From the IMG/VR virus record IMGVR_UViG_3300033049_000066, positions 229,279 through 293,278 of that record: a stretch of 64,000 nt of DNA. One strand, 5' to 3'. The first letter of the stretch is position 1. Each line of letters starts with the position of its first letter. This document shows, piece after piece, positions 3,047 to 40,256 of this stretch. A program made the translations under genes and the position numbers. The notes beneath the pieces were generated by a model. The model saw only the letters and a program-made list of their open reading frames with translations, had not been told where the DNA came from and did not search any database.

Positions 3047-5017
3047 ATGGCTAAACGGAAAAAGAATTATTTAAATAACAAGGATATGCTCAAGGAAATT
3101 CACCTTAGCAAAATATCATATTGTGCGTTTACTGACAAGGTAGAGGACAATCAACAAGATTTCATCGTGGAAAGTGCTGACGCGATCTTCGGTACGCAGA
3201 ATGTAGAGGTTAAGAAAGAAACCGAAACCTCAGCTGCGGTTTTTGAAGACATCCCGGTAATACAGCTTGCGAGAAAAGCTAGGGCAGCGAGACTTACAAA
3301 ATTAGAAATTCCAACTGCGGTAGAAGATATAGTTGACACAGATATTGTATTTCGTGTAATGACGAACGAACACATTCCACGAGTCCCCAAGAAAAAATCC
3401 AAGGCACTACTAGCAAAAGAAGCAAAGCAAGCGAAATCCGACGCGATTTTTGACGAGCTTATGGATGGCGACGAGGATGGCGACGCTCCTACACCCACCG
3501 GGCCTGAGGTTATCTTGATCCCAATGCGTGTAAATTTTCCACCGTTTTTCCATTACCGGTTGACGGATGAACCGGGTGAACTAAAACTTGTCGGCAAATC
3601 CCACTGGCGTGGTGACTTAGAAACAGGCAGTTTCAACAAGACCAAGGGGCAAACTACAAACAATCTTGCTATGATGTACATCAAGCTCTGTGAGCGGTAC
3701 GGCACTAGAGGCAATTGGAGAGGGTATTGTGTAGATCAGGCCACAGAGGCTCTCACAGACCGTGGGTGGTTATTTGAAAATGAGATTACCGAAAATGATA
3801 AAATTTTATCATATAATGGCTCGACTATGGTTTGGTCTAACATTAATTCTATGTTTCGGGATAATTACAGTGGATTAATGCATAAACTTACATCTCGTAG
3901 CATCGATTCACTAATCACACCAAGTCATAAAATTGTAACCGATAAGGGGTTACTAAAGATTGAATATCTCAAAGAATCAGACCGGGTCGTTGTAATGGGT
4001 GATGCTGTGCCTACGGAGTTTGAGAAAACATACACAGATCAACTAGTTGAATTAGCTGGATGGATCATAACAGAAGGTAATTATCAACCCAAAAAGAAAA
4101 TTGTTACGATTTATCAAAACGAAGGTTCTTATGCCGACCGCATACGTAAATGTTTACATAACTTAAATTACTCGTTTTCTGAACGCAAATCTTCGAAATC
4201 CGAGAATATTTCATTTGCTATTAAGAGGAAGTACTGGGATGAAATCACAAATCTATTACCTAACAAAAATCTAACTATGGATTTTATTTTAAAACTTACG
4301 TATAATCAACGTGAATTATTAGTTAAAACAATGGTGGATGGTGATGGACACAGACACGGATTATTAATGCGATATACTCAGAAAAATAAAGAACACATGG
4401 ATCATTTTCAAACGTTATGTGCGCTAATTGGGTTAAAATCAAATGTTCATTATGTCGAGAATAAAATGTCATTCGGTAAGCCGGTTAACTATTATGTAAC
4501 AAATGTGTTTTCAAAACGAGGAAACTACACACGTGGATCGGCTATCGACATGCACGGTGGGAAAGACAATGGGAGTAGACACGTCGGCAAGGGGAAATTT
4601 TTCCACCCCAACAAGCCCACGGTGCAGTACGATGGTACGGTATGGTGCCCGGAGACTGACTACGGTTGCTTCTTAGCTAGGCGTAACGGAAAAGTATATT
4701 TGACCGGAAATACGTACAACGATGAAATGCAGGGGCAGGCTTTACTCCAGCTTTCGCAAATTGGACTTCAGTTCAATGAGCTAAAATCGCAGAATCCATT
4801 TGCGTACTACACTGCCGCGGTCACGAACAGTTTTACCCGGGTCTTAAACATTGAGAAAAAGATGCAAAATATCCGAGACGATATCCTCGAGTCAAATGGG
4901 CTCACTCCTAGCTGGACAAGGCAATACGCGAATGATGCGAAAAAGATGCCCCAGTATGATTACAATCTAAATGATCCCAGGAAGAAAAAGGCCAAAGAAG
5001 AGGAACCTAAAACTTAG
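3047..5017 (+). CDS. gp55: T4-like late sigma factor, intein-containing
   Basis: N-terminal NYLNNKDML. After intein removal the protein reads NWRGY|TYNDEM...QFNELKSQNPFAYYT...F.RVLNIEKK. It lies upstream of gp47/gp46 as in T4. Confidence 0.88.
   Translation: MAKRKKNYLNNKDMLKEIHLSKISYCAFTDKVEDNQQDFIVESADAIFGTQNVEVKKETETSAAVFEDIPVIQLARKARAARLTKLEIPTAVEDIVDTDIVFRVMTNEHIPRVPKKKSKALLAKEAKQAKSDAIFDELMDGDEDGDAPTPTGPEVILIPMRVNFPPFFHYRLTDEPGELKLVGKSHWRGDLETGSFNKTKGQTTNNLAMMYIKLCERYGTRGNWRGYCVDQATEALTDRGWLFENEITENDKILSYNGSTMVWSNINSMFRDNYSGLMHKLTSRSIDSLITPSHKIVTDKGLLKIEYLKESDRVVVMGDAVPTEFEKTYTDQLVELAGWIITEGNYQPKKKIVTIYQNEGSYADRIRKCLHNLNYSFSERKSSKSENISFAIKRKYWDEITNLLPNKNLTMDFILKLTYNQRELLVKTMVDGDGHRHGLLMRYTQKNKEHMDHFQTLCALIGLKSNVHYVENKMSFGKPVNYYVTNVFSKRGNYTRGSAIDMHGGKDNGSRHVGKGKFFHPNKPTVQYDGTVWCPETDYGCFLARRNGKVYLTGNTYNDEMQGQALLQLSQIGLQFNELKSQNPFAYYTAAVTNSFTRVLNIEKKMQNIRDDILESNGLTPSWTRQYANDAKKMPQYDYNLNDPRKKKAKEEEPKT
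3728..4711 (+). mobile_element. Intein (328 aa) with LAGLIDADG homing endonuclease in gp55
   Basis: Starts CVDQATEALTDRGW. Block B ITPSHK; endonuclease motifs LAGWIITEG and MVDGDG. Ends VWCPETDYGCFLARRNGKVYLTGN followed by T(+1). Confidence 0.92.
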
Positions 5018-14510: not shown

Positions 14511-16235
14511 ATGGCAGATAAAAAGAATGCTGGTGGATGGAAGAAGTATTTTAAAGTAGCAGACACCTCAGGAACAATGAGTCCGATTAGTGGGCTTGGG
14601 AATATCAATGGGCAAGTTGGGTTTAAAAACTATCAGAGTAACTTACCAGAGGTGTACACCGGTCACCCTAATAGAATCGAACGTTACAATCAGTACGAAG
14701 CAATGGATATGGATAGCGAAGTTAACGCTTGCTTAGATATCATATCTGAATTTTCAACTCAAACAAACGAGCAGAACAATACCGCATTTGACTTCTTCTT
14801 TAATGAAACACCGACCGACAACGAAATTAACATTATTACTCAGCAACTTAATCAATGGGTGAAACTGAACGAATTTGATAAACGCATTTTTAAAATATTT
14901 CGCAATACAATTAAGTACGGCGATCAAGTTTTTATACGTGATCCAGAAACATTTAAATTATTTTGGGTTGAGACAAACAAAATTTCAAGAGTAATTGTAA
15001 ACGAAAGTGATGGTAAAAAGCCCGAGCAATACATTGTTCAAGACATAAATCCAAATTTCGAAAACTTAACAGTCGCAGCAAAAACAACAACTGATTTTCA
15101 ATCAGGTATGCCAAACCAAGGTTACACCGCGCCACAATCGTACACAATACCTGATCAACAAGGTGCGAGTACAGGTGGTCGTTTTTCAATGTCGCAGACA
15201 GAATCCGCTGTTGACGCAGAGCATATTGTACACATCAGCCTTACAGAAGGGCTAGACTACAACTGGCCTTTTGGACAATCAATACTTGAGCAAATATACA
15301 AAGTTTACAAACAAAAAGAATTACTTGAAGACGCTATTTTAATATATCGCATACAACGAGCACCGGAGCGCCGCATTTTTTATGTTGACACAGGCGATAT
15401 GCCAGCACATTTAGCAATGGGATTTGTTGAACGTATTAAGAACGAAATACACCAACGCAGAATACCAACACAGAGCGGTGGAGCAAACCAACTGGATGCG
15501 AGTTACAATCCAATTTCAATGAATGAAGATTACTTTTTCCCGCAAACCGCTGATGGACGTGGCTCGAGAGTAGAGACATTACCCGGTGGACAGAATCTGT
15601 CTGAGATCGACGACCTACGTTACTTCAACAACAAAATGGCACGTGGACTTCGAGTACCGTCAAGCTACCTACCAACTGGCCCAGATGACAGCCAAGGGAC
15701 ACTAAACGATGGACGCATGGGAACGGCACTGATCCAAGAATTCCGCTTCAATCAGTACTGCGAGAGAATACAAAATACTATCATCACGAAGCTAAACACA
15801 GAATTCAAGATGTTTTTACACTGGAGAGGCTTCAACATTGATTCCAAAATCTTCGACTTAAAATTTAACAACCCGCAAAACTTTGCTAGCTACAGACAAA
15901 CAGAGCTCGACGCCACGCGCCTTGGCAACTTCGGTGGTGTTACAGATATTCCTTACATGTCTAAGCGATTCGCCCTGAAACGCTACTTAGGGCTATCAGA
16001 AGCAGAGATGGTCGAGAACGAAAAAATGTGGCGCGAAGAAAATAACGTTCCAGATGAATCAGTTACTGGCGGCGCCGGTGATGACTTACGTGGTGTTGGT
16101 GTCACTCCTGGGGGAATGGACGCAGACTTGGGAGACCTAGATGATTTTGAAGGCGCCGACGAGCTTGACCTTGATCTCGACGGTGGCCCAGATGAAGCAG
16201 GTGCCGGAGCCGAGATAGATGTCGAAACGCCATAA
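14511..16235 (+). CDS. gp20: Portal protein
   Basis: LLEDAILIYRIQRAPERRIFYVDTG, EDYFFP and ETLPGGQNL motifs. Confidence 0.97.
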   Translation: MADKKNAGGWKKYFKVADTSGTMSPISGLGNINGQVGFKNYQSNLPEVYTGHPNRIERYNQYEAMDMDSEVNACLDIISEFSTQTNEQNNTAFDFFFNETPTDNEINIITQQLNQWVKLNEFDKRIFKIFRNTIKYGDQVFIRDPETFKLFWVETNKISRVIVNESDGKKPEQYIVQDINPNFENLTVAAKTTTDFQSGMPNQGYTAPQSYTIPDQQGASTGGRFSMSQTESAVDAEHIVHISLTEGLDYNWPFGQSILEQIYKVYKQKELLEDAILIYRIQRAPERRIFYVDTGDMPAHLAMGFVERIKNEIHQRRIPTQSGGANQLDASYNPISMNEDYFFPQTADGRGSRVETLPGGQNLSEIDDLRYFNNKMARGLRVPSSYLPTGPDDSQGTLNDGRMGTALIQEFRFNQYCERIQNTIITKLNTEFKMFLHWRGFNIDSKIFDLKFNNPQNFASYRQTELDATRLGNFGGVTDIPYMSKRFALKRYLGLSEAEMVENEKMWREENNVPDESVTGGAGDDLRGVGVTPGGMDADLGDLDDFEGADELDLDLDGGPDEAGAGAEIDVETP

Positions 16236-17753: not shown

Positions 17754-18386
17754 ATGAGTATCTTACAAGAATATTTAAATTATGACGCAGCTAATGTTGA
17801 GCTTCTCACTGAAGCCAACAGCAGCGGCGGCAAAGATTTATACATGAAGGGCATCTGCATTCAAGGCGATCAAAAAAACGCCAACCAACGCATTTACCCT
17901 GCAAGAGAAATCACAACAGCCGTTAAAACACTTAACGAACAAATCAACGGTGGCTATTCTGTCTTAGGCGAAATAGACCATCCGGAAGATTTAAAGATCA
18001 ATTTAGACCGCGTGTCGCACATGATTACAGAAATGTGGATGGAAGGCGCTAACGGTTACGGTAAGTTAAAGATACTTCCAACTCCGATGGGCAAAGTTAT
18101 TGAAACAATGCTACAGTCAAAAGTTAAATTAGGCGTTTCGTCTAGGGGAAGTGGTAATGTTAACGAAGCCACAGGACACGTCAGTGAATTTGAAATAATC
18201 ACTGTAGATATCGTAGCACAGCCATCTGCTCCGGAAGCGTATCCGACAGCTATATATGAAGGCATCATGAATATGAAAGGTGGCTTGAAGTTGTTAGGTA
18301 TTGCAGAAGACGCTTGCGAGAACAAACGTGTACAAAGATATTTGAAAGAAGGCGTAATTGCGTTAATTAAAGATTTAAAGATTTAA
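17754..18386 (+). CDS. gp21: Prohead protease
   Basis: NANQRIYP, GEIDHP, GVSSRGSG, DIVAQPSAP. Confidence 0.96.
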   Translation: MSILQEYLNYDAANVELLTEANSSGGKDLYMKGICIQGDQKNANQRIYPAREITTAVKTLNEQINGGYSVLGEIDHPEDLKINLDRVSHMITEMWMEGANGYGKLKILPTPMGKVIETMLQSKVKLGVSSRGSGNVNEATGHVSEFEIITVDIVAQPSAPEAYPTAIYEGIMNMKGGLKLLGIAEDACENKRVQRYLKEGVIALIKDLKI

Positions 18387-20112: not shown

Positions 20113-21306
20113 ATGTCACAAGCACTATTAGAAAACCGTTGGGGTGAGACCAAAGAAGCATTGCTTGAAGGTCTTGACGGAACGAAACGTTCATCAATGA
20201 GCGTTATCTTAGAAAATACCCGTAACCACTTAGCAGAATCTGCTTCAAGTGGCGCTACTGCCGCTGGTAACGTTGCAACATTAAACCGTGTTATTTTACC
20301 AGTTATTCGACGTGTTATGCCTACCGTTATTGCTAACGAATTAGTAGGTGTTCAACCAATGAGTGGACCTGTTTCACAGATTCACACACTTCGCGTTCGT
20401 TACGGTGAAACATTAACTGACGGTTCTGCCGCAGCTACTAACGTTGCACCAGGTGATGAAGCTTTATCACCATTCAAAATTGCTCAGGCTTACTCAGCTG
20501 GTAATGGCGCAGCATCACAAGCTAACTATACAGCAGCAGCAACAGCTGGAATGGAAGGCACAGGTGGACGTTCAATAAGCGTACAGATCCTGAAGCAGGC
20601 AGTTGAAGCTAAAACTCGTAAGTTACAAGCACGTTGGACTTTCGAATCAGCACAAGACGCACAGTCTATGCATGGCATCGACGTAGAAGCAGAAATCATG
20701 GCAGCATTAGCGCAAGAAATTACCGCTGAAATTGACCAAGAAATTCTTCTTTCTTTACGTTCACTTGCTAGCACAGAAGAAACTTACAACCAGGCAGCAG
20801 TGTCAGGTACAGCTACATTTGTAGGTGACGAACACGCGGCTCTTGCAGTATTGATCAATCGTACTGCTAATAAGATCGCTCAGCGTACACGTCGTGGTGC
20901 AGGTAACTATGCAGTTGTTTCACCAGCAGCATTAACAGTACTTCAATCAGCTACTACCTCTGCTTTTGCACGTACAACTGAAGGTACTTTTGAAGCACCT
21001 ACAAACACTAAGTTTGTTGGTACTCTTAACTCAGCAATGAAAGTTTACGTTGACAGCTATGCTGCTGACAGTTCGCCAGTACTTGTTGGTTATAAAGGTT
21101 CAAGTGAATCAGACGCACCAGCGTTCTATTGTCCTTACATACCTTTAATGAGTTCAGGTGTTGTACTTGATCCAAGTACGTTTGAACCAGTTGTTAGCTT
21201 CATGACCAGATATGGTTATGTTGAGCTTACAAATACTGCTTCATCTTTCGGCAACGCTGGAGATTATCTCGGAGAAGTGGCCATTTCTAACCTTAGCTTC
21301 CAGTAA
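20113..21306 (+). CDS. gp23: Major capsid protein
   Basis: GVQPMSGP, KTRKLQARWT.E.AQD, EIDQEI, FYCPYIPL, MTRYG. Confidence 0.97.
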   Translation: MSQALLENRWGETKEALLEGLDGTKRSSMSVILENTRNHLAESASSGATAAGNVATLNRVILPVIRRVMPTVIANELVGVQPMSGPVSQIHTLRVRYGETLTDGSAAATNVAPGDEALSPFKIAQAYSAGNGAASQANYTAAATAGMEGTGGRSISVQILKQAVEAKTRKLQARWTFESAQDAQSMHGIDVEAEIMAALAQEITAEIDQEILLSLRSLASTEETYNQAAVSGTATFVGDEHAALAVLINRTANKIAQRTRRGAGNYAVVSPAALTVLQSATTSAFARTTEGTFEAPTNTKFVGTLNSAMKVYVDSYAADSSPVLVGYKGSSESDAPAFYCPYIPLMSSGVVLDPSTFEPVVSFMTRYGYVELTNTASSFGNAGDYLGEVAISNLSFQ

Positions 21307-21377: not shown

Positions 21378-21442
21378 GGCTAGTAAAAGGTTGACTTTAT
21401 GTCGTACTTGTGATAACATGAATATAAAAGTGAAATACTACT

Positions 21443-22040
21443 ATGCAACCTTATACATACATACTTACTAAAACATATACCAACTAACACCTTTTACTAT
21501 GGTGTACGTTATCAAAACGTCAAGAAGAAAATTCCCATTGCTAAAGATTTGTGGGTAAAGTATTTTACAAGTAGTCCAAAAATCAAAAGTTTAATTACAG
21601 AATACGGTGCCGATAGCTTTGAATTTGAGATCCGCAAAATATTTAAAACCCCTGAGCGAGCTACTGCCTGGGAAGCAAAAGTACTCAAGCGGATGAAAGT
21701 GTTAGAAAACAGAAAATGGATTAACGCAAATATCGCCGGGCACATTATGCCTACAGCTGAATCAAATAAGAAGATAAGTGACTTTCACAAAGGAAAGCCA
21801 AAATCCGCAGAACACAGACGTAAGATTAGCGAATCTGTAACAGGAACAACAAAACCGCCTCGGCATGAATGGTTGCAGAATCGCCCCGCTGAACTCATCA
21901 TTGCGCTAATAACCGCCCTTCAAAAAGATAAATTAACATGCTGGAATTTAATAAAAGATCCTGATATCCGGAAACAAAAAGCCTTCGAACACGAAATGGG
22001 CCGGTGTCAGCTGATGGTTGATCGTCTGCAAAAAATATAA
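21443..22040 (+). pseudogene. Frameshifted GIY-YIG homing endonuclease
   Basis: Removing one ATAC from the (ATAC)3 run restores MQPYTYLLKHIPTNTFYYGVR...YFTSS. NUMOD3-like KSAEHRRKISES. Confidence 0.75.
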
Positions 22041-22124: not shown

Positions 22125-22328
22125 TCACCTCGCTTGCAATCCAATCCAGATGATCACCGTGTCGAAGGCGGCCTCTGCCTCTGGTGACGCCTCTGAGAAA
22201 ATCTTGTCACCTAAGATGTAATTATAATTCGCAAAATCAAGCTGCTTGAAATTCGTCGGGATATTGAGCAACGGACGCCACCTCTTGCCGGCATACCACG
22301 TATCTTTCTTGGCCTTCCTCTGTATCAT
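22125..22328 (-). CDS. Small hypothetical protein (67 aa)
   Basis: ATGA-coupled to the upstream ORF; ends IIWIGLQAR. Confidence 0.6.
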   Translation of the reverse strand: MIQRKAKKDTWYAGKRWRPLLNIPTNFKQLDFANYNYILGDKIFSEASPEAEAAFDTVIIWIGLQAR

Positions 22329-22516
22329 TTGTTGAGCTCCTCCCAGACCCTTGCACCTGCAAAGGCAGTGCAAAAATCTTCACTCCACGCAGTGTACAGA
22401 ACATCATCAATTTTAAAATTGAGGTGATTAAAATCTGTGATCCTTGGTAAAAAGTACCGAGGAACCGGCGTCCAGTAATTTGGACTACCATTGTCAATGT
22501 TTATATAATATATCAT
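22325..22516 (-). CDS. Small hypothetical protein (63 aa)
   Basis: Downstream of a TTGACT-17-TATACT promoter (22615-22643); ends VWEELNK. Confidence 0.6.
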   Translation of the reverse strand: MIYYINIDNGSPNYWTPVPRYFLPRITDFNHLNFKIDDVLYTAWSEDFCTAFAGARVWEELNK

Positions 22517-22796
22517 ATTTTTACCACTAGCATCCTATGTCCAATTACCCGAGCTCTGCTCGGTTGCCTTCTAAGAAGGCAAGGCGTGTAATCGTTCTAC
22601 GCTTGCATAGTATGAGTATAACAGGTAAAATCGCAAAAGTCAATGATATTTCTGTATTTAGAGCAAATTACTCTAAATGGTTGCGAACTTACTATAAATA
22701 AGTTAAGCTAGTGCTGTAAACAGACACAGCAAGAAGCGCGAAATTATGAAAGATAAAGCATCCGATAAAATATGGAATAATCTTAAAAAAGAATAC

Positions 22797-22825
22797 TTGA
22801 CCATTGAGCAAAAAAAAGCTATAAT
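22797..22825 (+). promoter_or_regulatory. sigma70-type promoter
   Basis: TTGACC-17 nt-TATAAT. Confidence 0.7.
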
Positions 22826-22913
22826 ACAAGAACATTATATGCATATTGCTAATGATTCTATAGCAGCGGTACGTATTTTTCTTAAGACTCAAAAATAAGA
22901 TAACGGTTTAAAA

Positions 22914-24088
22914 ATGTTAACATCATACCAGGAAAAAGTTAAGTTACTAATGATATTAAAGTACGGCAGCTTAGAGCTAGCCTTTTTATCTGACGCTAAA
23001 TTTGATAAAACTGAAACCATTATTCTTAGGGACTATTTGTCAATTAAGGTACATCAGAGCAACTCCAAGATATATTACCCGGAAGAAAACAATGAGTGAA
23101 ACCGAGACATTCATGATATTAAAATACGGCAGCATTGCCGAAGCCTTTCGCGAGTACATTTGTCTAACCGAAGACGAAAAAAAGCTAATTCCGACGGACG
23201 AATATGAAATACTAATGGAATATGAATACGAATTGCACCCATTTAACTCCACGCCATTTGAGCCAAAATGAATACACAGACCTTCCTCGCCCTTAAATTT
23301 GGTAGCCTGTTTCGAGCATATCGATATTGGCTTGGAGATGTGAGATTGCGTACAACAATCGATCTCACTGCGGAACAACATTCAATCATGAACATCTATT
23401 TCGAGGACCTTAGCGTCAGCGAAAGAATACGACTTTATAGAAGAGACTGGAAAACCTAATGCAAACGTTTAACTACTACCGAACAAAATTGTACCTGCGC
23501 ATCACCTATGGAAGCGAAGAGGACATTCAAGAAGCAGGTAAGAACCACGAGGACGAGTCCAAGCGGACCCTAATCGCCACCTTCCTAGCCGAGGCCGCTA
23601 AACGAAATGACAGCATCAAATTCTCAAGAAAACGTTAAATTATTTCTGATCCTCCGTCACGGCTCAGTTCAGTCAGCATTCATAAAATGGATGATATACG
23701 AAGACCTTGACCTCTTTAGTAAGGAAGAAAACGCCCTGCTTGAAGCACTTTTTGCGGACTACTATCCAAATTTACTTCGCGCAAAAAATCCCATGCTTCA
23801 AAAACAGAATCAAAAAGAGGTTGACAAATGACAAAACGTATGCTAAAATATAAGCTTAACAACGCTCTCAAAAGAAGCAGACTATTCTCAACCAATTCAA
23901 CCTCTAGGATGAAAATAATGACACTAGAACAAGACCATCTTATTACACTGCTGCGCATAAAATATGGTGATATCGACGTCGTAACTGGTATGTGGTTGTA
24001 TAATGATCCGGAACTTAGTCCTGAAGAACTCGCGGCAGTTGATGCTTGGCTAAATTCCGATGAAAAAGAGGTTGACATCTTGGGCTAG
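22914..24088 (+). CDS. Tandem family of six small proteins (22914-23099, 23092-23271, 23268-23459, 23459-23638, 23607-23831, ~23918-24088)
   Basis: Overlapping start/stop coupling; shared N-terminal motif ILKYGS/ALKFGS/RITYGS/ILRHGS/RIKYGD. Confidence 0.75.
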
Positions 24089-24138
24089 TTGTCGTATAAT
24101 ATATATATAACAGTTAGATAACGAGCAAAGGTATAGAT
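24072..24138 (+). promoter_or_regulatory. Early promoter plus conserved leader
   Basis: TTGACA-17-TATAAT then ATAACAGTTAGATAAC, the same leader as the four repeats at 39.7-41.8 kb. Confidence 0.85.
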
Positions 24139-24450
24139 ATGTCAGCAAGTAAAACTATTATTAAAGAACTCCGGAAAGAAATCAGGGAATTATCAAATAA
24201 ACTCGAGGATTCGGAGAAGCATTTAGTTAGGCAAAAGCGACATATTCAAAGAATGGAGACTGCACATCTCGTAAAACTGTCGGATCTAAATTCACGAACA
24301 AATATCATAGCAAGTCGCCTGCGTTATAACTTTTCAAAAGAACTGACTTGGATGGCACTAGTCGATGACGGAGAATCGGTCTTCAGGATAATTCAAGAGG
24401 TTATTACTCAGCTTCGCGATACAGCTCATCCAAGCCAAGTTAACAGATAG
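24139..24450 (+). CDS. Hypothetical coiled-coil protein
   Basis: ORF directly behind an early promoter and RBS. Confidence 0.7.
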   Translation: MSASKTIIKELRKEIRELSNKLEDSEKHLVRQKRHIQRMETAHLVKLSDLNSRTNIIASRLRYNFSKELTWMALVDDGESVFRIIQEVITQLRDTAHPSQVNR

Positions 24451-24456
24451 AATTCG

Positions 24457-24565
24457 AACAACAAACAACAAACAACAAACAACAACAAACAACAAACAAC
24501 AACAAACAACAAACAACAACAAACAACAACAAACAACAACAAACAACAACAAACAACAACAAACA
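24457..24565 (+). repeat. A/C-only simple repeat (AAACAAC and AAACAACAAC units)
   Basis: About 109 nt with no G or T, intergenic. Confidence 0.97.
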
Positions 24566-24571
24566 TATATT

Positions 24572-26464
24572 ATGAAGTCAATACCAAAGTTCGAAAACCT
24601 AAATAAAGGTGGGGTACCGCTCGGGACATTATCTGTCTTTTCGTCCGACACTATATCATCAAAACCTCTAAGTAGCAAAGATCTCGTATGGGATCGATTG
24701 CAAAACGGAATCACACCAAAACCGGACTGGTCAGCAATAAGTATGACCCAGGCAATGTCCCGATTAAATCAGGCAATGCGAAAAGCTAAACCCACAGTGG
24801 AATTTTTTGTCAAAAAATCGCGTGACTACGAGCAAAATGGGATTGCTGATGATTGAATGAACACAGATTACAAAAAGTTGGAATCACCATATCCGAGTAA
24901 ATACTATAACCATTGAATACGTAGAATAGAATTATGATATTACCAAAGAAATTGTTTGAGAAAATAGAATTTTTTGAACACTCAATTGACCAGAGCTGCG
25001 GCCCTGTTGAAGTCAGTGACAAATTTATCCTACATTTCAGGGACTGGTGGCGCCGGAAAAAAGTGATAAAAATTAATCGTATCATTGAACATTACAACGC
25101 AGATGACGGATCATTTGTTCATAGATCGACACCCGGCGCAGCAGATTTATATAACCAATTAAACGACTGGGCAATATCAACTTTTGAAGAAAAGCTTACT
25201 AGCATATCAAGAAAGTATAAAACTCACAACAATGATAATATAATTGAGTTGAATCCAAAACCGGCCAACTTAGATGATGAGTAAAAGACGTAAGCGTAGA
25301 CAGCGCGGTAAGCGCATCGAAGAGCGAAAACTAGCTCTTAAAGTTTGGGTGAGGCTACAACGGAGACAAGGCCCTTCGGAAATGCCACCAGCCCCGCACT
25401 GGCTTAGACATTTCTCGTCCGTAGCACAAGAGCTTCACACTCTTGTAGTCGATCAGAATTCGTTAGAATATGAAACCACAACACGGGAAATCGCATACCG
25501 ACGAAAGAAAGATACCGCCGCTAAAAAAAGAAGAAGAACATATATTAAAAACGTTTATCTAGCAAAACACAAGCCCGTAATAGAATGAAAGAATCCAAAA
25601 TACAGATAACCCAACGCAAGATACGCAATGCGGTCCGTCGCCACAAAGATCGTGAAGCTGCCGCAGTATGGAAAAAGCTCACAGCATCCGAACCCAGGTC
25701 AATTGAGCATTACTTTAGCGAATTTAATGCTGCGGTCAAGTTGTCTTACAAGACACAACGACAACATCGAGAAAATAACTTATTAAAAACTGCCACGGGC
25801 TTAACAGCTACGACAATATCAACAGATGAGGTCCAAGATGGAAAAAAGTGAGATAATCTACGAGAGCGTGTGCCGCGACGTGATTCAATGCGAGCACTAT
25901 ATCGCGTGGGAATTTTATTCCGAGACGAATGACGATGAACGGTACTACGAATCCAACCTCACCTGTCATTCGTGTCAGCTAGTAGGGCAATCGTACAACA
26001 TAACCGAGTACAATGAATTCTGCCCCAATCAGAAAATTCTCAACAAGTATCACGACCGCCGCGTGATTGAAATCATAGCCCACGAGAAAAAGTGCGCAGA
26101 AGAAAAAATGTGGAAAATACTAAATGAGTAAACTTAGCAAAACTCAAGCAAAAGTTTGGGATCGCTTGATAAATCAGCCAGTCCCACCACGACCAACGTA
26201 CCCAACCGCAGGTACCAAGTACCACAATACAAAAACCAACCGGCTGCACATCTACAATGGCAAACAATGGATAGAGATAACGTGAGTAAGAACCTTAGCA
26301 AAACTCAAGCAAAAGTTTGGGAGAGACTGAACGCCAAGCCCACCTCGCTCGCAGATAAAGAAATTGAGATGATCCGCCGCTACATAAAATCCGACGAAGT
26401 ATTACAGTCCGCGAAGATGACGCTAGACATAGAACTACTCCTGGCAGACCGAAACAAAAATTAA
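24572..26464 (+). CDS. Cluster of small hypothetical proteins (24572-24856, 24934-25284, 25274-25588, 25585-25851, ~25838-26131, 26124-26285, 26282-26464)
   Basis: Mostly coupled ORFs; six of seven carry a (V/M)WxxL motif. Confidence 0.7.
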
Positions 26465-26576: not shown

Positions 26577-27128
26577 ATGGGACGACCAATCAACAAACGA
26601 TACTTGGGTGAGCCAACTGTCACAGGTAACGAAATTAAAGTACAATTTTTCAACGGCACAGCTTCAGTAAATGGCTGGATCGTCAAGCAGCTAGGCGCTA
26701 AAAAGTTTCGCTGCACAGATGGTACAGACACAGCAGATTGTCTGTTAGTTGACAAACTAGCAGCAGCTCTGATAGCTGGTGAAATGTCAATTAGTGTACG
26801 AGACGACAGCGCCGCAGTTAAGCAGATCGTTAAAATCGCTGGACGTAAAGTGACACTTGGGTCAGGCGAAAGCATTCCTTGGGACTTTAGCAGTTCAACA
26901 AGTGACGAACGTGTCGAAGTTGAAGAAGGTGGCGACCAATCAGCTCTGACAATTAGCATTCTTGACGCAACCGCTGGTGTAACGTACGCAATCGCAGTAC
27001 CAGGAACCACAGATTTCACACTACTTGGCGCAGCAGACAGCACAGCAGCAACCGAGTTTGAAATGAATGATGTTACTCCAGAAGGTACCGGAACTGTAAC
27101 AGCAGTCGAAGATACATTCGGTCTATAA
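26577..27128 (+). CDS. Virion structural protein
   Basis: MGRPINKRYLG...WIVKQ.G.KKF; late promoter, strong RBS and own terminator. Confidence 0.7.
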   Translation: MGRPINKRYLGEPTVTGNEIKVQFFNGTASVNGWIVKQLGAKKFRCTDGTDTADCLLVDKLAAALIAGEMSISVRDDSAAVKQIVKIAGRKVTLGSGESIPWDFSSSTSDERVEVEEGGDQSALTISILDATAGVTYAIAVPGTTDFTLLGAADSTAATEFEMNDVTPEGTGTVTAVEDTFGL

Positions 27129-29400: not shown

Positions 29401-32022
29401 ATGGCCATTAATTACATCAAAGGTGAATCACTAGCTGCAAATTTATTGCGCGGTGGAGTTGACCTAGCTGTTGAAACAGATTTACTCTATGTTGATGTAG
29501 CCAACGGACGCATTGGTATACAAAATGCAACACCAGGAACAACACTTGACATCACAGGAACAGTATCTGCGATGGCAGTCGTAACACCGATTGTAACCGT
29601 CGGCAACGTTATTATTAGCAACAACAATATTACAACCTCCATAGATGACTTAACCCTTACTTCAGCAACCACAAATGTTTCCTTACTTGGTGACCTAACA
29701 TTTAACGCTCCAGTTAGCGACATAACTGGTCAAGGTGATCTAGATAATTTAAACAATCAATCCGCACTTACAATAGTCACAACACTAGTTGATACACCGT
29801 ATTACCTGGGCAACGCAAGAGATGCAGTGTCTATAGGCTCGGACAGCGTAATCGCCGCAGCTAGCAGCCTGTATCTCACCCCAGACGGCTTGACAATATT
29901 TTATGTTGACAACAGCGGTGCTGGTACAATCCCAGTGGATGTGTACCAATCAACACTTGGTGTAGCCTTTGATTTATCAACAGCTGGTGTACCATCATTT
30001 ACAACGATTACAGGCGGCGCAATAACAGAAGCTGCCCATGCCGTTACTTTTAATATAAACGGCTTGGAAATGTATATTTCAAAATATACAAACGCTGGCG
30101 TTGATACGATAGTAGAAAAATTTACCCTTAGCTTAGCATTTGATTTATCATCGACAGTGACTTACATAGGAAATATTGTGTTAGGCGCTGGTGATGCGTT
30201 TAACTTTGCGCCAACATATTCCGCAGATGGATTAAAAGCTTACAACGCAGCCATTGACACCGCCGGCATATTTATTAATGAATACGATCTTAGCCCAGCA
30301 TATGATTTAACAACCGCTGTTTTTAATGGCAACTTTGATATCTCAACTGAGATAGTTAACACCACAAATTACATTACGACAGCCATGTCAACAGATGGAT
30401 TTACTGTATTTGCAGCGCAATATGCGGCGACAAATAACGTACTAGTAAGCTATGCATTAGGCACCGCACTTGATATTACAACCGCAGTTGAGCTACAAAC
30501 AGTTACCCCAGCAACAACCGCCGAAGTACAAGGCATATGGTTCCCATCAGATGGATTTAATTTTTACTGGCTAGACGATGACGGTGTGCTACTTCAATTT
30601 GATAGTACAAACAAATCCCCAAACACGACATCCACGGCGCTTAATTTCAGCGGCGCAGGAAAACTTATTACAACGGATGACGGAGTACAGATAAGTGGGC
30701 AGCTAATTTTACCAGGATATGCTACTGCGAGTATACCAGCTACAACTATAGCAGGCGGTCTGATTTACGACACAGATACAAACTCATTGAAAGTTTACAA
30801 CGGCAATGACTGGACAGCAATTGCTGGAGGCGGCAGTGGTGGCGGCAGTGGTGGCGGTATGCAAGGATGGAATTTGTCCACCGCAACAAACGCATCAAAG
30901 TCATTTTCAGTAGCAGGTCAGTTAGGTGAACCCACAGATTTAGCTATAAGTGAAGACGGTACAAAAGTTTATATTACAGATTTTGATGGCGTAGCGCCAG
31001 GGGTGTATCAGTATAATTTGACCACAGCTTGGGATTTTAGCACCGCATCGTACTCGGGCAATTTCGCCTCGACAATCGGCAACGGGGATTTCCCACTGTC
31101 CATAGCGTTCAATCGCAGCGGAACAAAAATGTTCATCGGGTCTACGAATGAAGTACATCAGCACACTTTGTCCCCGGCATGGGAACTTAGCGGCGCGAAC
31201 CCGGATCTAATCTCGTACACAATCGGCGCAGGTGTCGCAGCATCTGCGATAGCGTTCAACCCAGCCGGCACGGTGTTGCTCGTGCTAGACGACACAACAC
31301 GGACCGTCACCCAACATACTATGACATTACCGTACGACGTGGAAAATGCGGTAGCATCAGGGCTAAGCGGAGATGTTTTTGGCACAGTTAATAGTGGAGC
31401 ACGTGGGCTTAGTCTTAGTCCAGATGGTTACAAGATGTACGTCTCAGATGGACCAAATGAAGAAGTATACGAGTACCAGCTCACCACAGCACACGATCCA
31501 TCCACCTTAGTCTACACCAATCGGGCCCTAAGCACCACGGCCATCGACGGAGACATAGGCGGGATATTTTTTAGATACGACGGAAACAGACTGTACATGG
31601 TAGGCACCACCACCGACGCAGCCTATCAGTTCGACTTAGCATGGCACGACGAATACAGCCTCGCCACACAAGATTACGTAGACACCACATCCGTTAGCAT
31701 CGCGGGTGATGCTATGACCGGTGCACTAACAACCACCGGTGGTGTTGACTCACTAACAACCGCAACGACCGTAGTAAACGTAGCCGCAGCAGCAGCGCCG
31801 ACAGTCGGTCAAGTACTTACAGCAACCTCGGACTCACTTGCGACATGGCAAGATGCAGCAGGCGGCGACCCAGCCTCAGAGACCGTATCTGGAACAATTG
31901 AAATAGCAACACAGATAGAAGTTGATACCGGCACTGATGCGGTCCGTGCGGTGACACCAGCAACGCTACAAAAGAAAGCCGAAGAAACAGCAATGATAAT
32001 GTCTGTAGTATTTGGGATATAA
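29401..32022 (+). CDS. Tail fibre / receptor-binding protein with beta-propeller-like repeats
   Basis: LYVDVANGRIGI; repeated DG.K.Y...Y.L..AWD.STA units; gp34-like ATQIEVDTGTD..RAVTP. Confidence 0.8.
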   Translation: MAINYIKGESLAANLLRGGVDLAVETDLLYVDVANGRIGIQNATPGTTLDITGTVSAMAVVTPIVTVGNVIISNNNITTSIDDLTLTSATTNVSLLGDLTFNAPVSDITGQGDLDNLNNQSALTIVTTLVDTPYYLGNARDAVSIGSDSVIAAASSLYLTPDGLTIFYVDNSGAGTIPVDVYQSTLGVAFDLSTAGVPSFTTITGGAITEAAHAVTFNINGLEMYISKYTNAGVDTIVEKFTLSLAFDLSSTVTYIGNIVLGAGDAFNFAPTYSADGLKAYNAAIDTAGIFINEYDLSPAYDLTTAVFNGNFDISTEIVNTTNYITTAMSTDGFTVFAAQYAATNNVLVSYALGTALDITTAVELQTVTPATTAEVQGIWFPSDGFNFYWLDDDGVLLQFDSTNKSPNTTSTALNFSGAGKLITTDDGVQISGQLILPGYATASIPATTIAGGLIYDTDTNSLKVYNGNDWTAIAGGGSGGGSGGGMQGWNLSTATNASKSFSVAGQLGEPTDLAISEDGTKVYITDFDGVAPGVYQYNLTTAWDFSTASYSGNFASTIGNGDFPLSIAFNRSGTKMFIGSTNEVHQHTLSPAWELSGANPDLISYTIGAGVAASAIAFNPAGTVLLVLDDTTRTVTQHTMTLPYDVENAVASGLSGDVFGTVNSGARGLSLSPDGYKMYVSDGPNEEVYEYQLTTAHDPSTLVYTNRALSTTAIDGDIGGIFFRYDGNRLYMVGTTTDAAYQFDLAWHDEYSLATQDYVDTTSVSIAGDAMTGALTTTGGVDSLTTATTVVNVAAAAAPTVGQVLTATSDSLATWQDAAGGDPASETVSGTIEIATQIEVDTGTDAVRAVTPATLQKKAEETAMIMSVVFGI

Positions 32023-39902: not shown

Positions 39903-40256
39903 TCAATGACTTACTAGAGCAGCTCTCGGGGATTCCCCGATCACCTGCTTTCCGTGCCTGTACCACTCCTTCGTGCCATCAGCTAGTTCAACAGCCGGCC
40001 CGCCTATTCTGTGTAGTTTACCGTATCTGTACCACCACGTAGCACCATTTGTAAGTGCCATAGCCGGGCCGCCTATTCTGTGTAATTTTCCATTTTGGTA
40101 CCAAAATTTGTCACCATTTGCGTACTCGATAGCAGGCCCATCTTCTCTGTGTGATTTTCCATTTTGGTACCAAAATTTGTCACCATCTTTGTCAACACGA
40201 ATATCGTACTTTAAGCGATTGAATGTTTCTTGTGCTGTACCTTCAATCACGAGCAA
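39903..40256 (-). CDS. HREDGPA-repeat (MORN-variant-like) protein
   Basis: Repeats of WY.NGKLHR..GPA. Confidence 0.85.
   Translation of the reverse strand: MLVIEGTAQETFNRLKYDIRVDKDGDKFWYQNGKSHREDGPAIEYANGDKFWYQNGKLHRIGGPAMALTNGATWWYRYGKLHRIGGPAVELADGTKEWYRHGKQVIGESPRAALVSH

What the first reader, a model, noticed from the sequence alone, without database searches (positions are those of the whole stretch)
22125..26464. A short W-x-x-L helical tag shared by many unrelated small proteins
Seen: ARVWEELNK* (22325), VIIWIGLQ (22125), DLVWDRLQ (24572), LKVWVRLQ (25274), AAVWKKLT (25585), EKMWKILNE* (25826), AKVWDRLI (26124) and AKVWERLN (26282). Variants occur outside the cluster: LTCWNLIKDP (21549 ORF), EMAWMLIKNP (43629), ETFNRLKY (39903) and MSFNRLKY (44044). 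The motif sits at N-terminal, internal or C-terminal positions with no other similarity. Inference: a portable docking motif that addresses diverse cargos to one hub (a phage scaffold, host protease/chaperone, or RNA polymerase), which would be an undescribed recruitment system.
Basis: partly seen in the sequence, partly recalled or inferred. Interest (0 to 1): 0.8.

Follow-up and report, generated by a model that had tools for sequence, protein, structure and literature searches.

The report
Shared helix tag on phage mini-proteins
A short tryptophan-leucine helix is shared, far beyond chance, by dozens of otherwise unrelated small proteins of a marine giant phage and its relatives, often joined to pieces of the phage's own core proteins; what the helix binds is still unknown.

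Summary
The motif is [V/I/M]-W-x-x-L, usually E-[KQ]-[ED]-[KE]-Φ-W-[DK]-[KR]-L-[KS]. It forms the last turn of a long charged helix, followed by Pro/Gly or the protein's end.

- **Enrichment:** in proteins of 125 aa or fewer in this 293-kb marine T4-like jumbo phage it occurs 19 times against 2.6 expected. Larger proteins, F/Y variants and other spacings show no excess.
- **Level:** it is selected as protein, because synonymous codon positions vary freely.
- **Relatives:** two close relatives (MCP 91-92% identical) and two more distant contigs show the same excess, mostly in the same cassette downstream of the major capsid gene. More distant relatives lack it.
- **Conservation:** orthologues keep W and L while the rest diverges.
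- **Cargo:** with the tag masked, 59 carriers fall into 47 unrelated groups. In relatives the cargo is often a recognisable fragment of a core phage protein: Gp23 capsid segments, sheath C-domain, tail-fibre repeat, sigma region 2 and the DnaB P-loop.

A portable terminal module is therefore supported. A common binding partner is inferred and untested. Clamp-binding, lambda CIII and sigma region 4 membership were tested and not met.

The parts
22125..22328 (-). 67-aa gene with a C-terminal tag (VIIWIGLQAR-stop; tag codons 22137-22151)
   Evidence: ORF and peptide. Called by JGI. Homologues in G002 end in MWAKLKA, VWEKLSD and IWQKLSD.
22325..22516 (-). 63-aa gene with a C-terminal tag (ARVWEELNK-stop; tag codons 22334-22348)
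   Evidence: Two G001 homologues end in LLWEALQRD and LLIERLSRSA.
22746..22898 (+).
   Evidence: Orthologues in G001 and G002 keep W..L.KEYLT.EQK. The late-type TATAAATA box at 22693-22700 lies upstream.
24139..24450 (+). 103-aa gene with an internal conserved W..L (ELTWMALVDD)
   Evidence: Orthologues read ELAWMALCDD and DIMWSKLGNED. It is the first gene after the consensus promoter at 24072-24100.
24572..24856 (+). 94-aa gene; tag DLVWDRLQNGITPKP at residues 38-52
   Evidence: Linked to the N-terminal tag family by BLAST single linkage.
25274..25588 (+). 104-aa gene: Arg-rich N-terminus plus tag (LKVWVRLQRRQGP) plus a diverged capsid-like remnant
   Evidence: Residues 1-43 match G001 gene 256994 (E 7e-8) in the syntenic slot. 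The cargo aligns weakly (E 8e-4) with the Gp23-like part of G001 gene 256677.
25585..25851 (+). 88-aa gene: conserved ~37-aa N-terminal module ending in AAVWKKL; its cargo is not Gp23-like
   Evidence: Alignment A2 has invariant M1, R11, I13, N15, R18, W29 and L32 in 18 sequences. All nine homologues tested carry a Pfam Gp23 fragment after the tag. AlphaFold gives helix 5-34 (pLDDT about 90), a break, then a second helix.
25826..26131 (+). 101-aa Cys-rich gene with a C-terminal tag (EKMWKILNE-stop)
   Evidence: Four-member family whose invariant columns include four Cys, W96 and L99. AlphaFold puts the tag at the end of helix 69-100.
26124..26285 (+). 53-aa gene: tag (SKTQAKVWDRLINQP) plus one tail-fibre-type repeat unit
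   Evidence: PHROG hits to residues 18-52. A profile of the three orthologues' cargo hits tail-fibre-like proteins, including window 29401-32022 (E 1e-7 to 5e-7).
26267..26464 (+). 65-aa gene: tag (SKTQAKVWERLNAKP) plus a helix weakly like Gp23 residues 198-220
   Evidence: Orthologue of G001 gene 255610 (E 5e-5). The best non-self hits of the cargo profile are the three major capsid proteins (E 0.02-0.03).
26130..26161 (+). First copy of the 32-nt direct repeat that encodes the tag of gene 26124
   Evidence: 31 of 32 identical to 26291-26322.
26291..26322 (+). Second copy of the 32-nt direct repeat that encodes the tag of gene 26267
   Evidence: The same pair of neighbouring genes also has near-identical tag DNA in G001, which points to concerted evolution.
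24072..24100 (+). Perfect TTGACA-17-TATAAT promoter-like site with the phage's upstream AAAAAGAGG extension, heading the tag genes
   Evidence: The same extended consensus occurs about 50 times in the genome. A second copy lies at 23821-23849.
21549..22040 (+). SegE-like GIY-YIG/NUMOD3 homing endonuclease gene between the capsid gene and the cassette
   Evidence: It holds the same position as segD between genes 23 and 24 of T4.

Best explanation
The W-x-x-L peptide is the core of a portable terminal helix module.

Anatomy: a long, highly charged helix whose last turn exposes three hydrophobic side chains (V/I/M, W, L). The helix is ended by Pro/Gly or by the protein's end.

Carriers: a set of small accessory proteins encoded mainly in a hyperplastic cassette just downstream of the major capsid gene, the place of gene 24 in T4, in one clade of marine T4-like jumbo phages.

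What is shown:
- The module is conserved as protein.
- It sits at either end of the protein.
- Neighbouring copies are duplicated or homogenised at the DNA level.
- It is joined to interchangeable cargos. In relatives these are often short fragments of the phage's own core proteins.

What is inferred: the module is a docking or recognition helix read by one common partner, so that the cassette delivers a panel of mini-cargos to the same place. The partner is unknown. My leading guess is a component of the prohead core or scaffold, working like the T4 capsid-targeting sequence. A host factor is nearly as likely.
For: **Enrichment and specificity**
-.
- Synonymous positions carry no information.

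**Same signal in relatives**
- G001: 15 observed vs 4.2 expected; charged form 12 vs 0.46.
- G002: 21 vs 4.6; charged form 14 vs 0.45.
- L176: 12 vs 1.35. L177: 8 vs 0.5.
- Most instances lie in the syntenic cassette after the capsid gene.

**Selection on the tag**
- W and L are among the few invariant columns of each family.
- 63% of cross-genome homologues found with the tag masked carry the motif, against a 10% background.

**Modularity**
- 47 cargo groups for 59 carriers; 37 N-terminal and 16 C-terminal.
- The same MKE..QRKIRNG.RKQ...W..L module precedes a Gp23 fragment, a DNA-polymerase-like piece, a helicase P-loop piece or unrelated sequence.

**Surface-patch character**
- The logo is charged except at three positions.
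- Pro or the chain end follows within 7 residues of L in 39 of 59 instances, against 16.9 in controls.
- AlphaFold places the tag at the end of helices 5-34 and 69-100.

**Head context**
- The cassette lies inside the head gene block.
- A late-type TATAAATA box sits at 22693.
- T4-type capsid proteins start with a W-x-P-[LV]-L..EG motif.
Against: - No binding partner was tested, and no co-folding is possible with these tools.
- Part of the sharing is plain common descent: syntenic orthologues, tandem duplicates and a 32-nt repeat.
- The tag is not followed by a consistent L/I-x-E protease site as the T4 targeting sequence is (read from the sequences). C-terminal tags also have no counterpart in T4.
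- The strongest promoters in the cassette are sigma-70-like, that is early. That fits head targeting poorly.
- In the window itself most cargos are no longer recognisable as core-protein fragments.
- All counts rest on my own simple gene caller.
- No RNA run was listed, so expression is unproven.
Confidence: 0.45

Rival explanations
1. The carriers are a diverged gene superfamily. They descend from a few ancestors by tandem duplication, gene conversion and recombination. The W..L turn is only the best-kept structural piece, a helix end or folding or self-association nucleus, with no shared external partner.
For: - A syntenic cassette is conserved across five genomes.
- BLAST single linkage joins 19 carriers through the tag region.
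- The tag DNA of neighbouring genes is near-identical in two genomes.
- The family is confined to one clade. It is absent from 14 and 15 more distant early-region loci and from most of the 80 capsid-gene neighbourhoods.
Against: - The conserved block has only three hydrophobic positions in a charged helix, which is too little for a folding core or a coiled coil.
- It occurs at the N-terminus in some families and at the C-terminus in others.
- It outlasts the cargo, which is replaced between orthologues.
Confidence: 0.3
2. The tag is a leader or follower peptide read by a modifying or processing enzyme, as in RiPP precursor arrays with conserved leaders and variable cores.
For: - Arrays of many small genes carry a conserved terminal peptide and variable remainder.
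- G001 carries a weak radical-SAM-like gene inside the cassette.
- IscA and NifU genes end the cassette in relatives.
Against: - The radical-SAM-like gene is found only in G001.
- No such enzyme lies in the window's cassette.
- The cargos are 30-100 aa and resemble protein fragments, not Cys/Ser/Thr-rich cores.
Confidence: 0.07
3. The carriers are lambda-CIII-like amphipathic helices that inhibit, or are fed to, the host protease FtsH.
For: Lambda CIII reads RDGWKRLIDILNQPGVP inside its essential 14-37 helix. R32A, within W-K-R-L, is dominant negative (PMC1838920). Gene 26124 reads KVWDRLINQPVPP.
Against: - No Pfam Lambda_CIII hit even at E up to 10.
- The match is a handful of residues with an indel.
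- About 20 inhibitors per genome would be odd.
Confidence: 0.05
4. The motif reflects a DNA or RNA element, or is chance or compositional bias.
For: Three copies share AAAGTTTGGG.
Against: - Information at the third codon positions of the hydrophobic residue and of Leu is 0.0-0.1 bit across 19 copies.
- All six Leu codons are used.
- Shuffles never reach the observed counts.
- Large proteins and F/Y variants serve as internal controls and show no excess.
Confidence: 0.02
5. The tag is a sliding-clamp binding motif, since such motifs also occur at N-terminal, internal or C-terminal positions.
For: Q at W-4 is common, which gives a Q-x-x-hydrophobic-W-x-x-L pattern loosely like a PIP box.
Against: The DNA polymerases of all three genomes end in TFG(N/K)LFEF, the T4/RB69-type clamp tail, not in the W motif.
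Confidence: 0.02

Closest known systems
T4 capsid-targeting sequence (CTS) on polymorphic internal proteins (own knowledge: Mullaney and Black 1996; Comeau and Krisch 2005)
   Same: A short conserved terminal peptide is shared by otherwise unrelated small proteins encoded in a hyperplastic locus of a T4-type phage. It addresses varied cargos to one place.
   Different: The CTS is strictly N-terminal, has a different sequence (MKTYQEFIAE) and is cut off at an L/I-x-E site. Here the tag is at either end, no consistent cleavage site follows it, and virion presence is unknown.
Promoter-early stem-loop (PeSL) cassettes that shuffle small ORFs in T4-type phages (own knowledge: Arbiol et al. 2010)
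   Same: Hyperplastic regions of small ORFs are punctuated by repeated early promoters. Here there is an extended TTGAC(A/C)-17-TATAAT consensus in about 50 copies.
   Different: PeSLs are DNA-level shuffling sites. Here the shared element is inside the coding sequence and is conserved as protein.
Lambda CIII FtsH inhibitor
   Same: A small early phage protein whose active part is a charged helix containing W-K-R-L and ended by NQPG-P.
   Different: No profile match. CIII is a single gene. The helix here has no extended amphipathic face.
RiPP precursor arrays with conserved leaders (for example prochlorosins; own knowledge)
   Same: Many tandem small genes with a conserved recognition peptide and a variable remainder.
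   Different: No conserved maturase sits next to them. The cargos are protein fragments. The tag may be C-terminal.
Gol peptide of T4 gp23 (residues 93-122; own knowledge: Bingham et al. 2000)
   Same: G001 gene 256994 and G002 gene 4700 carry a free-standing copy of exactly this capsid segment (..RR.P....A.D..G.QPM).
   Different: Gol is part of the capsid protein itself. Here the segment is a separate small protein behind a tag or a tag-like peptide. The window's orthologue 25274 has lost the resemblance.

Membership tests
T4-type capsid-targeting sequence proteins | Conserved targeting peptide at the extreme N-terminus | tested here: not met
   37 of 59 tags are N-terminal, but W lies at residue 8-41 and not in the first 10. 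Sixteen are C-terminal.
T4-type capsid-targeting sequence proteins | Prohead-protease site (L/I-x-E) directly after the peptide | tested here: inconclusive
   Reading the sequences: L-K-E or L-Q-E follows in a few members (G001 genes 256677 and 259042), not in most.
T4-type capsid-targeting sequence proteins | Protein present in the prohead or virion | not testable with these tools
   Uncultured phage from a seawater metagenome.
Lambda CIII (Pfam Lambda_CIII) | Profile match to the family | tested here: not met
   No hit at E up to 10 for ten carriers.
Lambda CIII (Pfam Lambda_CIII) | Inhibition of FtsH | not testable with these tools
   This is a biochemical property.
Sliding-clamp binding motif of T4-like phages | Same motif at the C-terminus of the phage DNA polymerase | tested here: not met
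   The polymerases end in TFG(N/K)LFEF.
Sigma-70 region 4 / LuxR-type HTH (helix 1, L-T-x-x-Q-x-x-V-x-x-L) | Profile match that includes the following helix-turn-helix | tested here: not met
   No Sigma70_r4 or GerE hit at E up to 10. The best-looking candidate, G002 gene 71312, turned out to be tag plus tail-sheath C-terminal domain.
Small 'MKETA..QRKIRNG..VWDRLK + Gp23 fragment' proteins (unnamed family found here) | Conserved ~37-aa N-terminal module | tested here: met
   Window gene 25585 shares M1, R11, I13, N15, R18, W29 and L32 with 17 others. E 2e-9 to the G001 orthologue.
Small 'MKETA..QRKIRNG..VWDRLK + Gp23 fragment' proteins (unnamed family found here) | Pfam Gp23 segment (profile positions about 146-188) after the module | tested here: not met
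   Present above the Pfam cutoff in 9 of 9 homologues. Absent from the window's copy.
RiPP precursor peptides | Cognate modifying enzyme in the same gene cluster | tested here: not met
   None in the window's cassette. The radical-SAM-like gene occurs only in G001.

The most novel reading that the evidence does not exclude
The cassette encodes a panel of tagged mini-fragments of the phage's own most conserved proteins: three or four capsid segments including the Gol-peptide region, the sheath C-domain, a tail-fibre repeat, sigma region 2, the helicase P-loop and polymerase motif A. These act as molecular decoys or blockers. Their targets would be host immune sensors that recognise the core phage proteome (Lit, CapRel or Avs type; such sensors for capsid, helicase, polymerase and tail proteins are described in bioRxiv 10.64898/2026.01.04.697583), or the assembly and replication machines of rival phages and satellites. 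The common W-x-x-L helix would supply the shared step, such as recruitment, sequestration or delivery through the capsid.
Probability: 0.12. Interest if true: 0.9.

Novelty: new variant of a known kind. Interest (0 to 1): 0.65.

Why it matters
Small phage accessory proteins are mostly unexplained ORFans. Here about a tenth of them in one phage clade share a selectable, transplantable peptide. That gives a single experimental handle, one peptide and two point mutants, on dozens of unknown genes at once.

The cargo finding raises a second, directly testable question: why does a phage keep free-standing, tagged copies of short segments of its capsid, sheath, fibre, sigma and helicase proteins? 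These copies are conserved across genomes of 35-42% GC. Possible answers include immune evasion, inter-phage competition and control of assembly.

Tried and rejected
- **Pfam and PHROGs** on all window carriers and ten carriers elsewhere gave nothing informative beyond the tail-fibre repeat in 26124 and the homing endonuclease.
- **ESM Atlas** on gene 25585 gave only low-confidence helical look-alikes.
- **Word-based homologue search** with gene 25826 found only itself.
- **80 capsid-gene neighbourhoods** at 79-88% MCP identity: none of the window's cluster genes has a homologue there except one weak 30-aa hit for 26124 (E 6e-4), and there is no enrichment.
- **Early-promoter pattern search:** 14 distant relatives, no enrichment.
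- **Anchor L118:** no relatives.
- **Rejected hypotheses:** DNA-level motif, clamp-binding, sigma region 4 and CIII membership, a RiPP maturase.
- **Tag as the capsid segment before profile position 146:** BLAST extends into it for one cyanophage capsid protein, but with a beta-strand pattern, and the Pfam match starts only after the tag. Inconclusive.
- **Capsid-like remnants in the window's own cassette:** none significant by tblastn.
- **RNA-seq runs** for expression: none was listed.
Full report
**What the window is.** The window is the last 64 kb of a 293,278-bp metagenomic contig. DNA runs labelled seawater metagenome hold it. It carries a T4-type head module:
- portal at 14511-16235;
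- S77 prohead protease at 17754-18386;
- Gp23 major capsid protein (MCP) at 20113-21306.

The MCP is 63-66% identical to those of the closest listed cultured phages, all large (284-469 kb): Vibrio phage 2.275.O, Pseudomonas PA5oct, Sinorhizobium Phosso, and Escherichia and Xanthomonas phages. The gene order matches T4, where segD and then gene 24 follow gene 23. Here the MCP gene is followed by a SegE-like GIY-YIG endonuclease gene (21549-22040) and then by about 20 small genes up to 26464.

**Observation check.** JGI called seven of the eight carrier ORFs, including the two minus-strand ones; 26124-26285 was called only by my own caller. The two minus-strand ORFs have homologues in relatives.

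I called genes for the whole genome with a hexamer model (404 genes) and shuffled each protein within itself.

| Pattern, protein size | Observed | Expected |
|---|---|---|
| W..L, 125 aa or fewer | 30 | 15.5 |
| [VIM]W..L, 125 aa or fewer | 19 | 2.6 |
| [VIM]W + two charged/polar + L, 125 aa or fewer | 10 | 0.2 |
| [VIM]W..L, over 125 aa | 8 | 11.4 |

F or Y in place of W, W.L and W...L are not enriched.

It is also not among the ten most enriched gapped pairs.
- The sharper form that the cluster suggests holds on the independent remainder of the genome (10 vs 2.2, 0 of 2000 shuffles).
- The third codon positions of the hydrophobic residue and of Leu carry 0.0-0.1 bit over 19 copies. The conservation is therefore in the protein, not in the DNA.

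**Distribution.**
- In 80 MCP neighbourhoods from IMG/VR (79-88% MCP identity), where the next structural gene (the homologue of 26577-27128) could be located it often follows the MCP gene within 180-350 nt. The window's small genes have no homologues there apart from one weak 30-aa hit for 26124, and the motif is not enriched.
- It is also not enriched in 14 distant loci fetched through the phage's early-promoter consensus (4 vs 3.9), nor in 15 distant loci around a nucleotidyltransferase gene.
- Two close relatives, taken whole, show the same signal. These are G001 (344 kb, complete, MCP 92%) and G002 (250 kb, MCP 91%). G001 gives 15 vs 4.2, charged form 12 vs 0.46. G002 gives 21 vs 4.6, charged form 14 vs 0.45.
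- Most instances lie in the same place, a cassette of small genes downstream of the MCP gene.
- Two further contigs of different base composition (L176, 35% GC; L177, 40% GC) carry still larger cassettes with the same excess (12 vs 1.35 and 8 vs 0.5).

The motif therefore marks a clade-level gene set, not a quirk of one genome.

**Anatomy of the tag.**
- Over 59 instances in three genomes the logo is E-[KQ]-[ED]-[KE]-[VMI]-W-[KD]-[KR]-L-[KS]. This is a charged helix with three hydrophobic positions.
- Pro or the chain end follows within seven residues of the Leu in 39 of 59 cases, against 16.9 for other leucines of the same proteins. Counting Gly as well gives 50 of 59.
- Thirty-seven tags are N-terminal, 16 C-terminal and 6 internal.
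- AlphaFold models built on family alignments put the tag at the end of a confident helix 5-34 in gene 25585 (pLDDT about 90) and at the end of helix 69-100 in gene 25826.

**Selection and modularity.**
- Syntenic orthologues of the window genes exist in G001 and G002 for 22746, 24139, 24934, 25274, 25585, 25826, 26124 and 26267.
- In each family W and L are among the few invariant columns. One example is the four endings EKMWKILNE, EAIWDKLNAVE, REMWRRLK and EKIWRILQYV.
- With the tag masked, the 59 carriers fall into 47 BLAST groups. Of 30 cross-genome homologue pairs found with masked queries, 19 carry the motif, against a 10% background.
- For 25274 and 25585 the orthology is confined to the first 40-43 residues, module plus tag (E 7e-8 and 2e-9). 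The rest has been replaced or has decayed.
- The ~37-aa module of 25585 (MKE..QRKIRNG.RKQ...W..L) is found in front of four kinds of cargo: a Gp23 fragment in most homologues, a DNA-polymerase-motif-A-like piece, a DnaB P-loop piece, and unrelated sequence in the window.
- Genes 26124 and 26267 share a 32-nt repeat that is 97% identical and encodes their tags. The same neighbouring pair is also near-identical in G001. This indicates duplication or gene conversion.

**The cargo.** This was the unexpected result. In the relatives many cargos are short fragments of core phage proteins.

| Cargo | Evidence |
|---|---|
| Gp23 profile positions about 146-188 | Above Pfam's cutoff in 9 of 9 small proteins; the match starts at residue 40-44, after the tag |
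| MCP residues 57-84 | E 1e-8 to 5e-6 |
| MCP YCPYIPL segment | Suggestive only (E 0.07-0.13); the three MCPs are the top hits |
| MCP 198-220-like helix | E 0.02-0.03; the three MCPs are the top hits |
| Tail-sheath C-terminal domain | Pfam E 7e-5 |
| Tail-fibre repeat unit | Profile E 1e-7 |
| Sigma-70 region 2 | Pfam E 1e-6 |
| DnaB Walker A region | Profile E 3e-4 |
| DNA polymerase motif A | Suggestive only, E 0.045-0.3 |

MCP residues 57-84 correspond to T4 gp23 residues 93-122. The T4 sequence was checked. That this segment is the Gol peptide is my own knowledge.

In the window itself, only 26124 (tail-fibre repeat) is significant. Gene 26267 (capsid helix) and gene 25274 (E 8e-4 to the Gp23-like part of a relative) are weak, and tblastn with the MCP finds nothing significant. 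The E-values from my local searches refer to a database of about 1,350 proteins.

**Expression signals.**
- A perfect TTGACA-17-TATAAT site with the phage's upstream extension lies at 24072-24100, and a near-perfect one at 23821-23849. The extended consensus occurs about 50 times in the genome.
- A T4-late-type TATAAATA box lies at 22693, upstream of 22746.
- The cassette has the orientation of the MCP gene, so read-through is possible.
- No RNA run was listed, so the timing is inferred, not shown.

**Mechanism.** It is shown that the tag is a conserved, transplantable terminal helix on varied cargos. It is inferred that one partner reads it.
- I rank a docking or recognition role first (0.45). 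The conserved surface is a three-residue hydrophobic patch at the tip of a charged helix, it works from either end of the protein, and it outlasts the cargo.
- The head-gene context gives a prohead-core or scaffold partner a slight lead. So does the W-x-P-[LV]-L..EG start of T4-type capsid proteins. Against it stand the missing protease site, the C-terminal tags and the early-type promoters.
- The main rival (0.3) is that the tag is merely the most durable piece of an old, duplicating gene family.
- Specific hubs tested: the clamp motif is contradicted. CIII and sigma region 4 are not met as families. The RiPP-leader idea lacks a conserved enzyme.

**Novelty.** The nearest known arrangement is the T4 capsid-targeting sequence on polymorphic internal proteins. 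This differs in sequence, in position and in the nature of the cargo. I found no description of tagged free-standing fragments of core proteins. My literature check was limited: two full-text searches, with passages read from two papers.

**Limits.**
- All enrichment figures rest on my own gene caller.
- The host is unknown.
- There is no expression, proteomic or binding evidence.

Noticed in passing
window 22914-24088: A second small-protein family (motif ..ILKYGS..AF) lies in six tandem ORFs. It has 3 members in G001 and 9 in G002 in the same cassette. Function unknown.
   Followed up: partly
window 21400-22040: The SegE-like GIY-YIG/NUMOD3 endonuclease ORF starts only in the second half of the domain. 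The N-terminal GIY-YIG half (..FYYGVRY..) is in frame upstream but has no ATG, GTG or TTG start. About ten MCP relatives carry a homologous endonuclease at the same place.
   Followed up: partly
window 3047-5017: This 656-aa protein is the counterpart of a 325-aa gp55-like late sigma factor in G001 and G002 (same N-terminus). It contains a LAGLIDADG domain at residues 426-475, so it is probably an intein or an in-frame endonuclease insertion.
   Followed up: partly
window 24457-24565: An A/C-rich tandem repeat (AACAACAAAC, 11 copies) fills the gap in front of gene 24572. It could be an unstructured leader or a slippage-prone tract.
   Followed up: no
whole genome; in the window at 2989, 23821, 24072, 39733(-), 41008(-), 41407(-), 41755(-): A highly conserved extended promoter-like element, (TAACCGCAA)WTAGAGG-TTGAC(A/C)-17 nt-TATAAT, occurs about 50 times, mostly in front of small genes. 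The exact element also occurs in otherwise unrelated viral contigs.
   Followed up: partly
window 39903-40256 (-) and about 13 other places in the genome: A family of about 14 paralogues (50-70% identical) is built from G...WY.NGK.HR..GPA repeats, which look MORN-like. This explains the genome-wide excess of G...W, WY and H....P pairs.
   Followed up: no
G001 254462-259055 (L156); L176 11479-11805; L177 9411-10154: In relatives the cassette ends with IscA-type and, in L177, NifU-type Fe-S assembly genes. G001 also has a weak radical-SAM-like gene inside it. The window's cassette has none of these.
   Followed up: partly
G000 100679-103435 and its counterparts in G001 and G002: The family-B DNA polymerases end in TFG(N/K)LFEF, a T4/RB69-like clamp-binding tail.
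   Followed up: no
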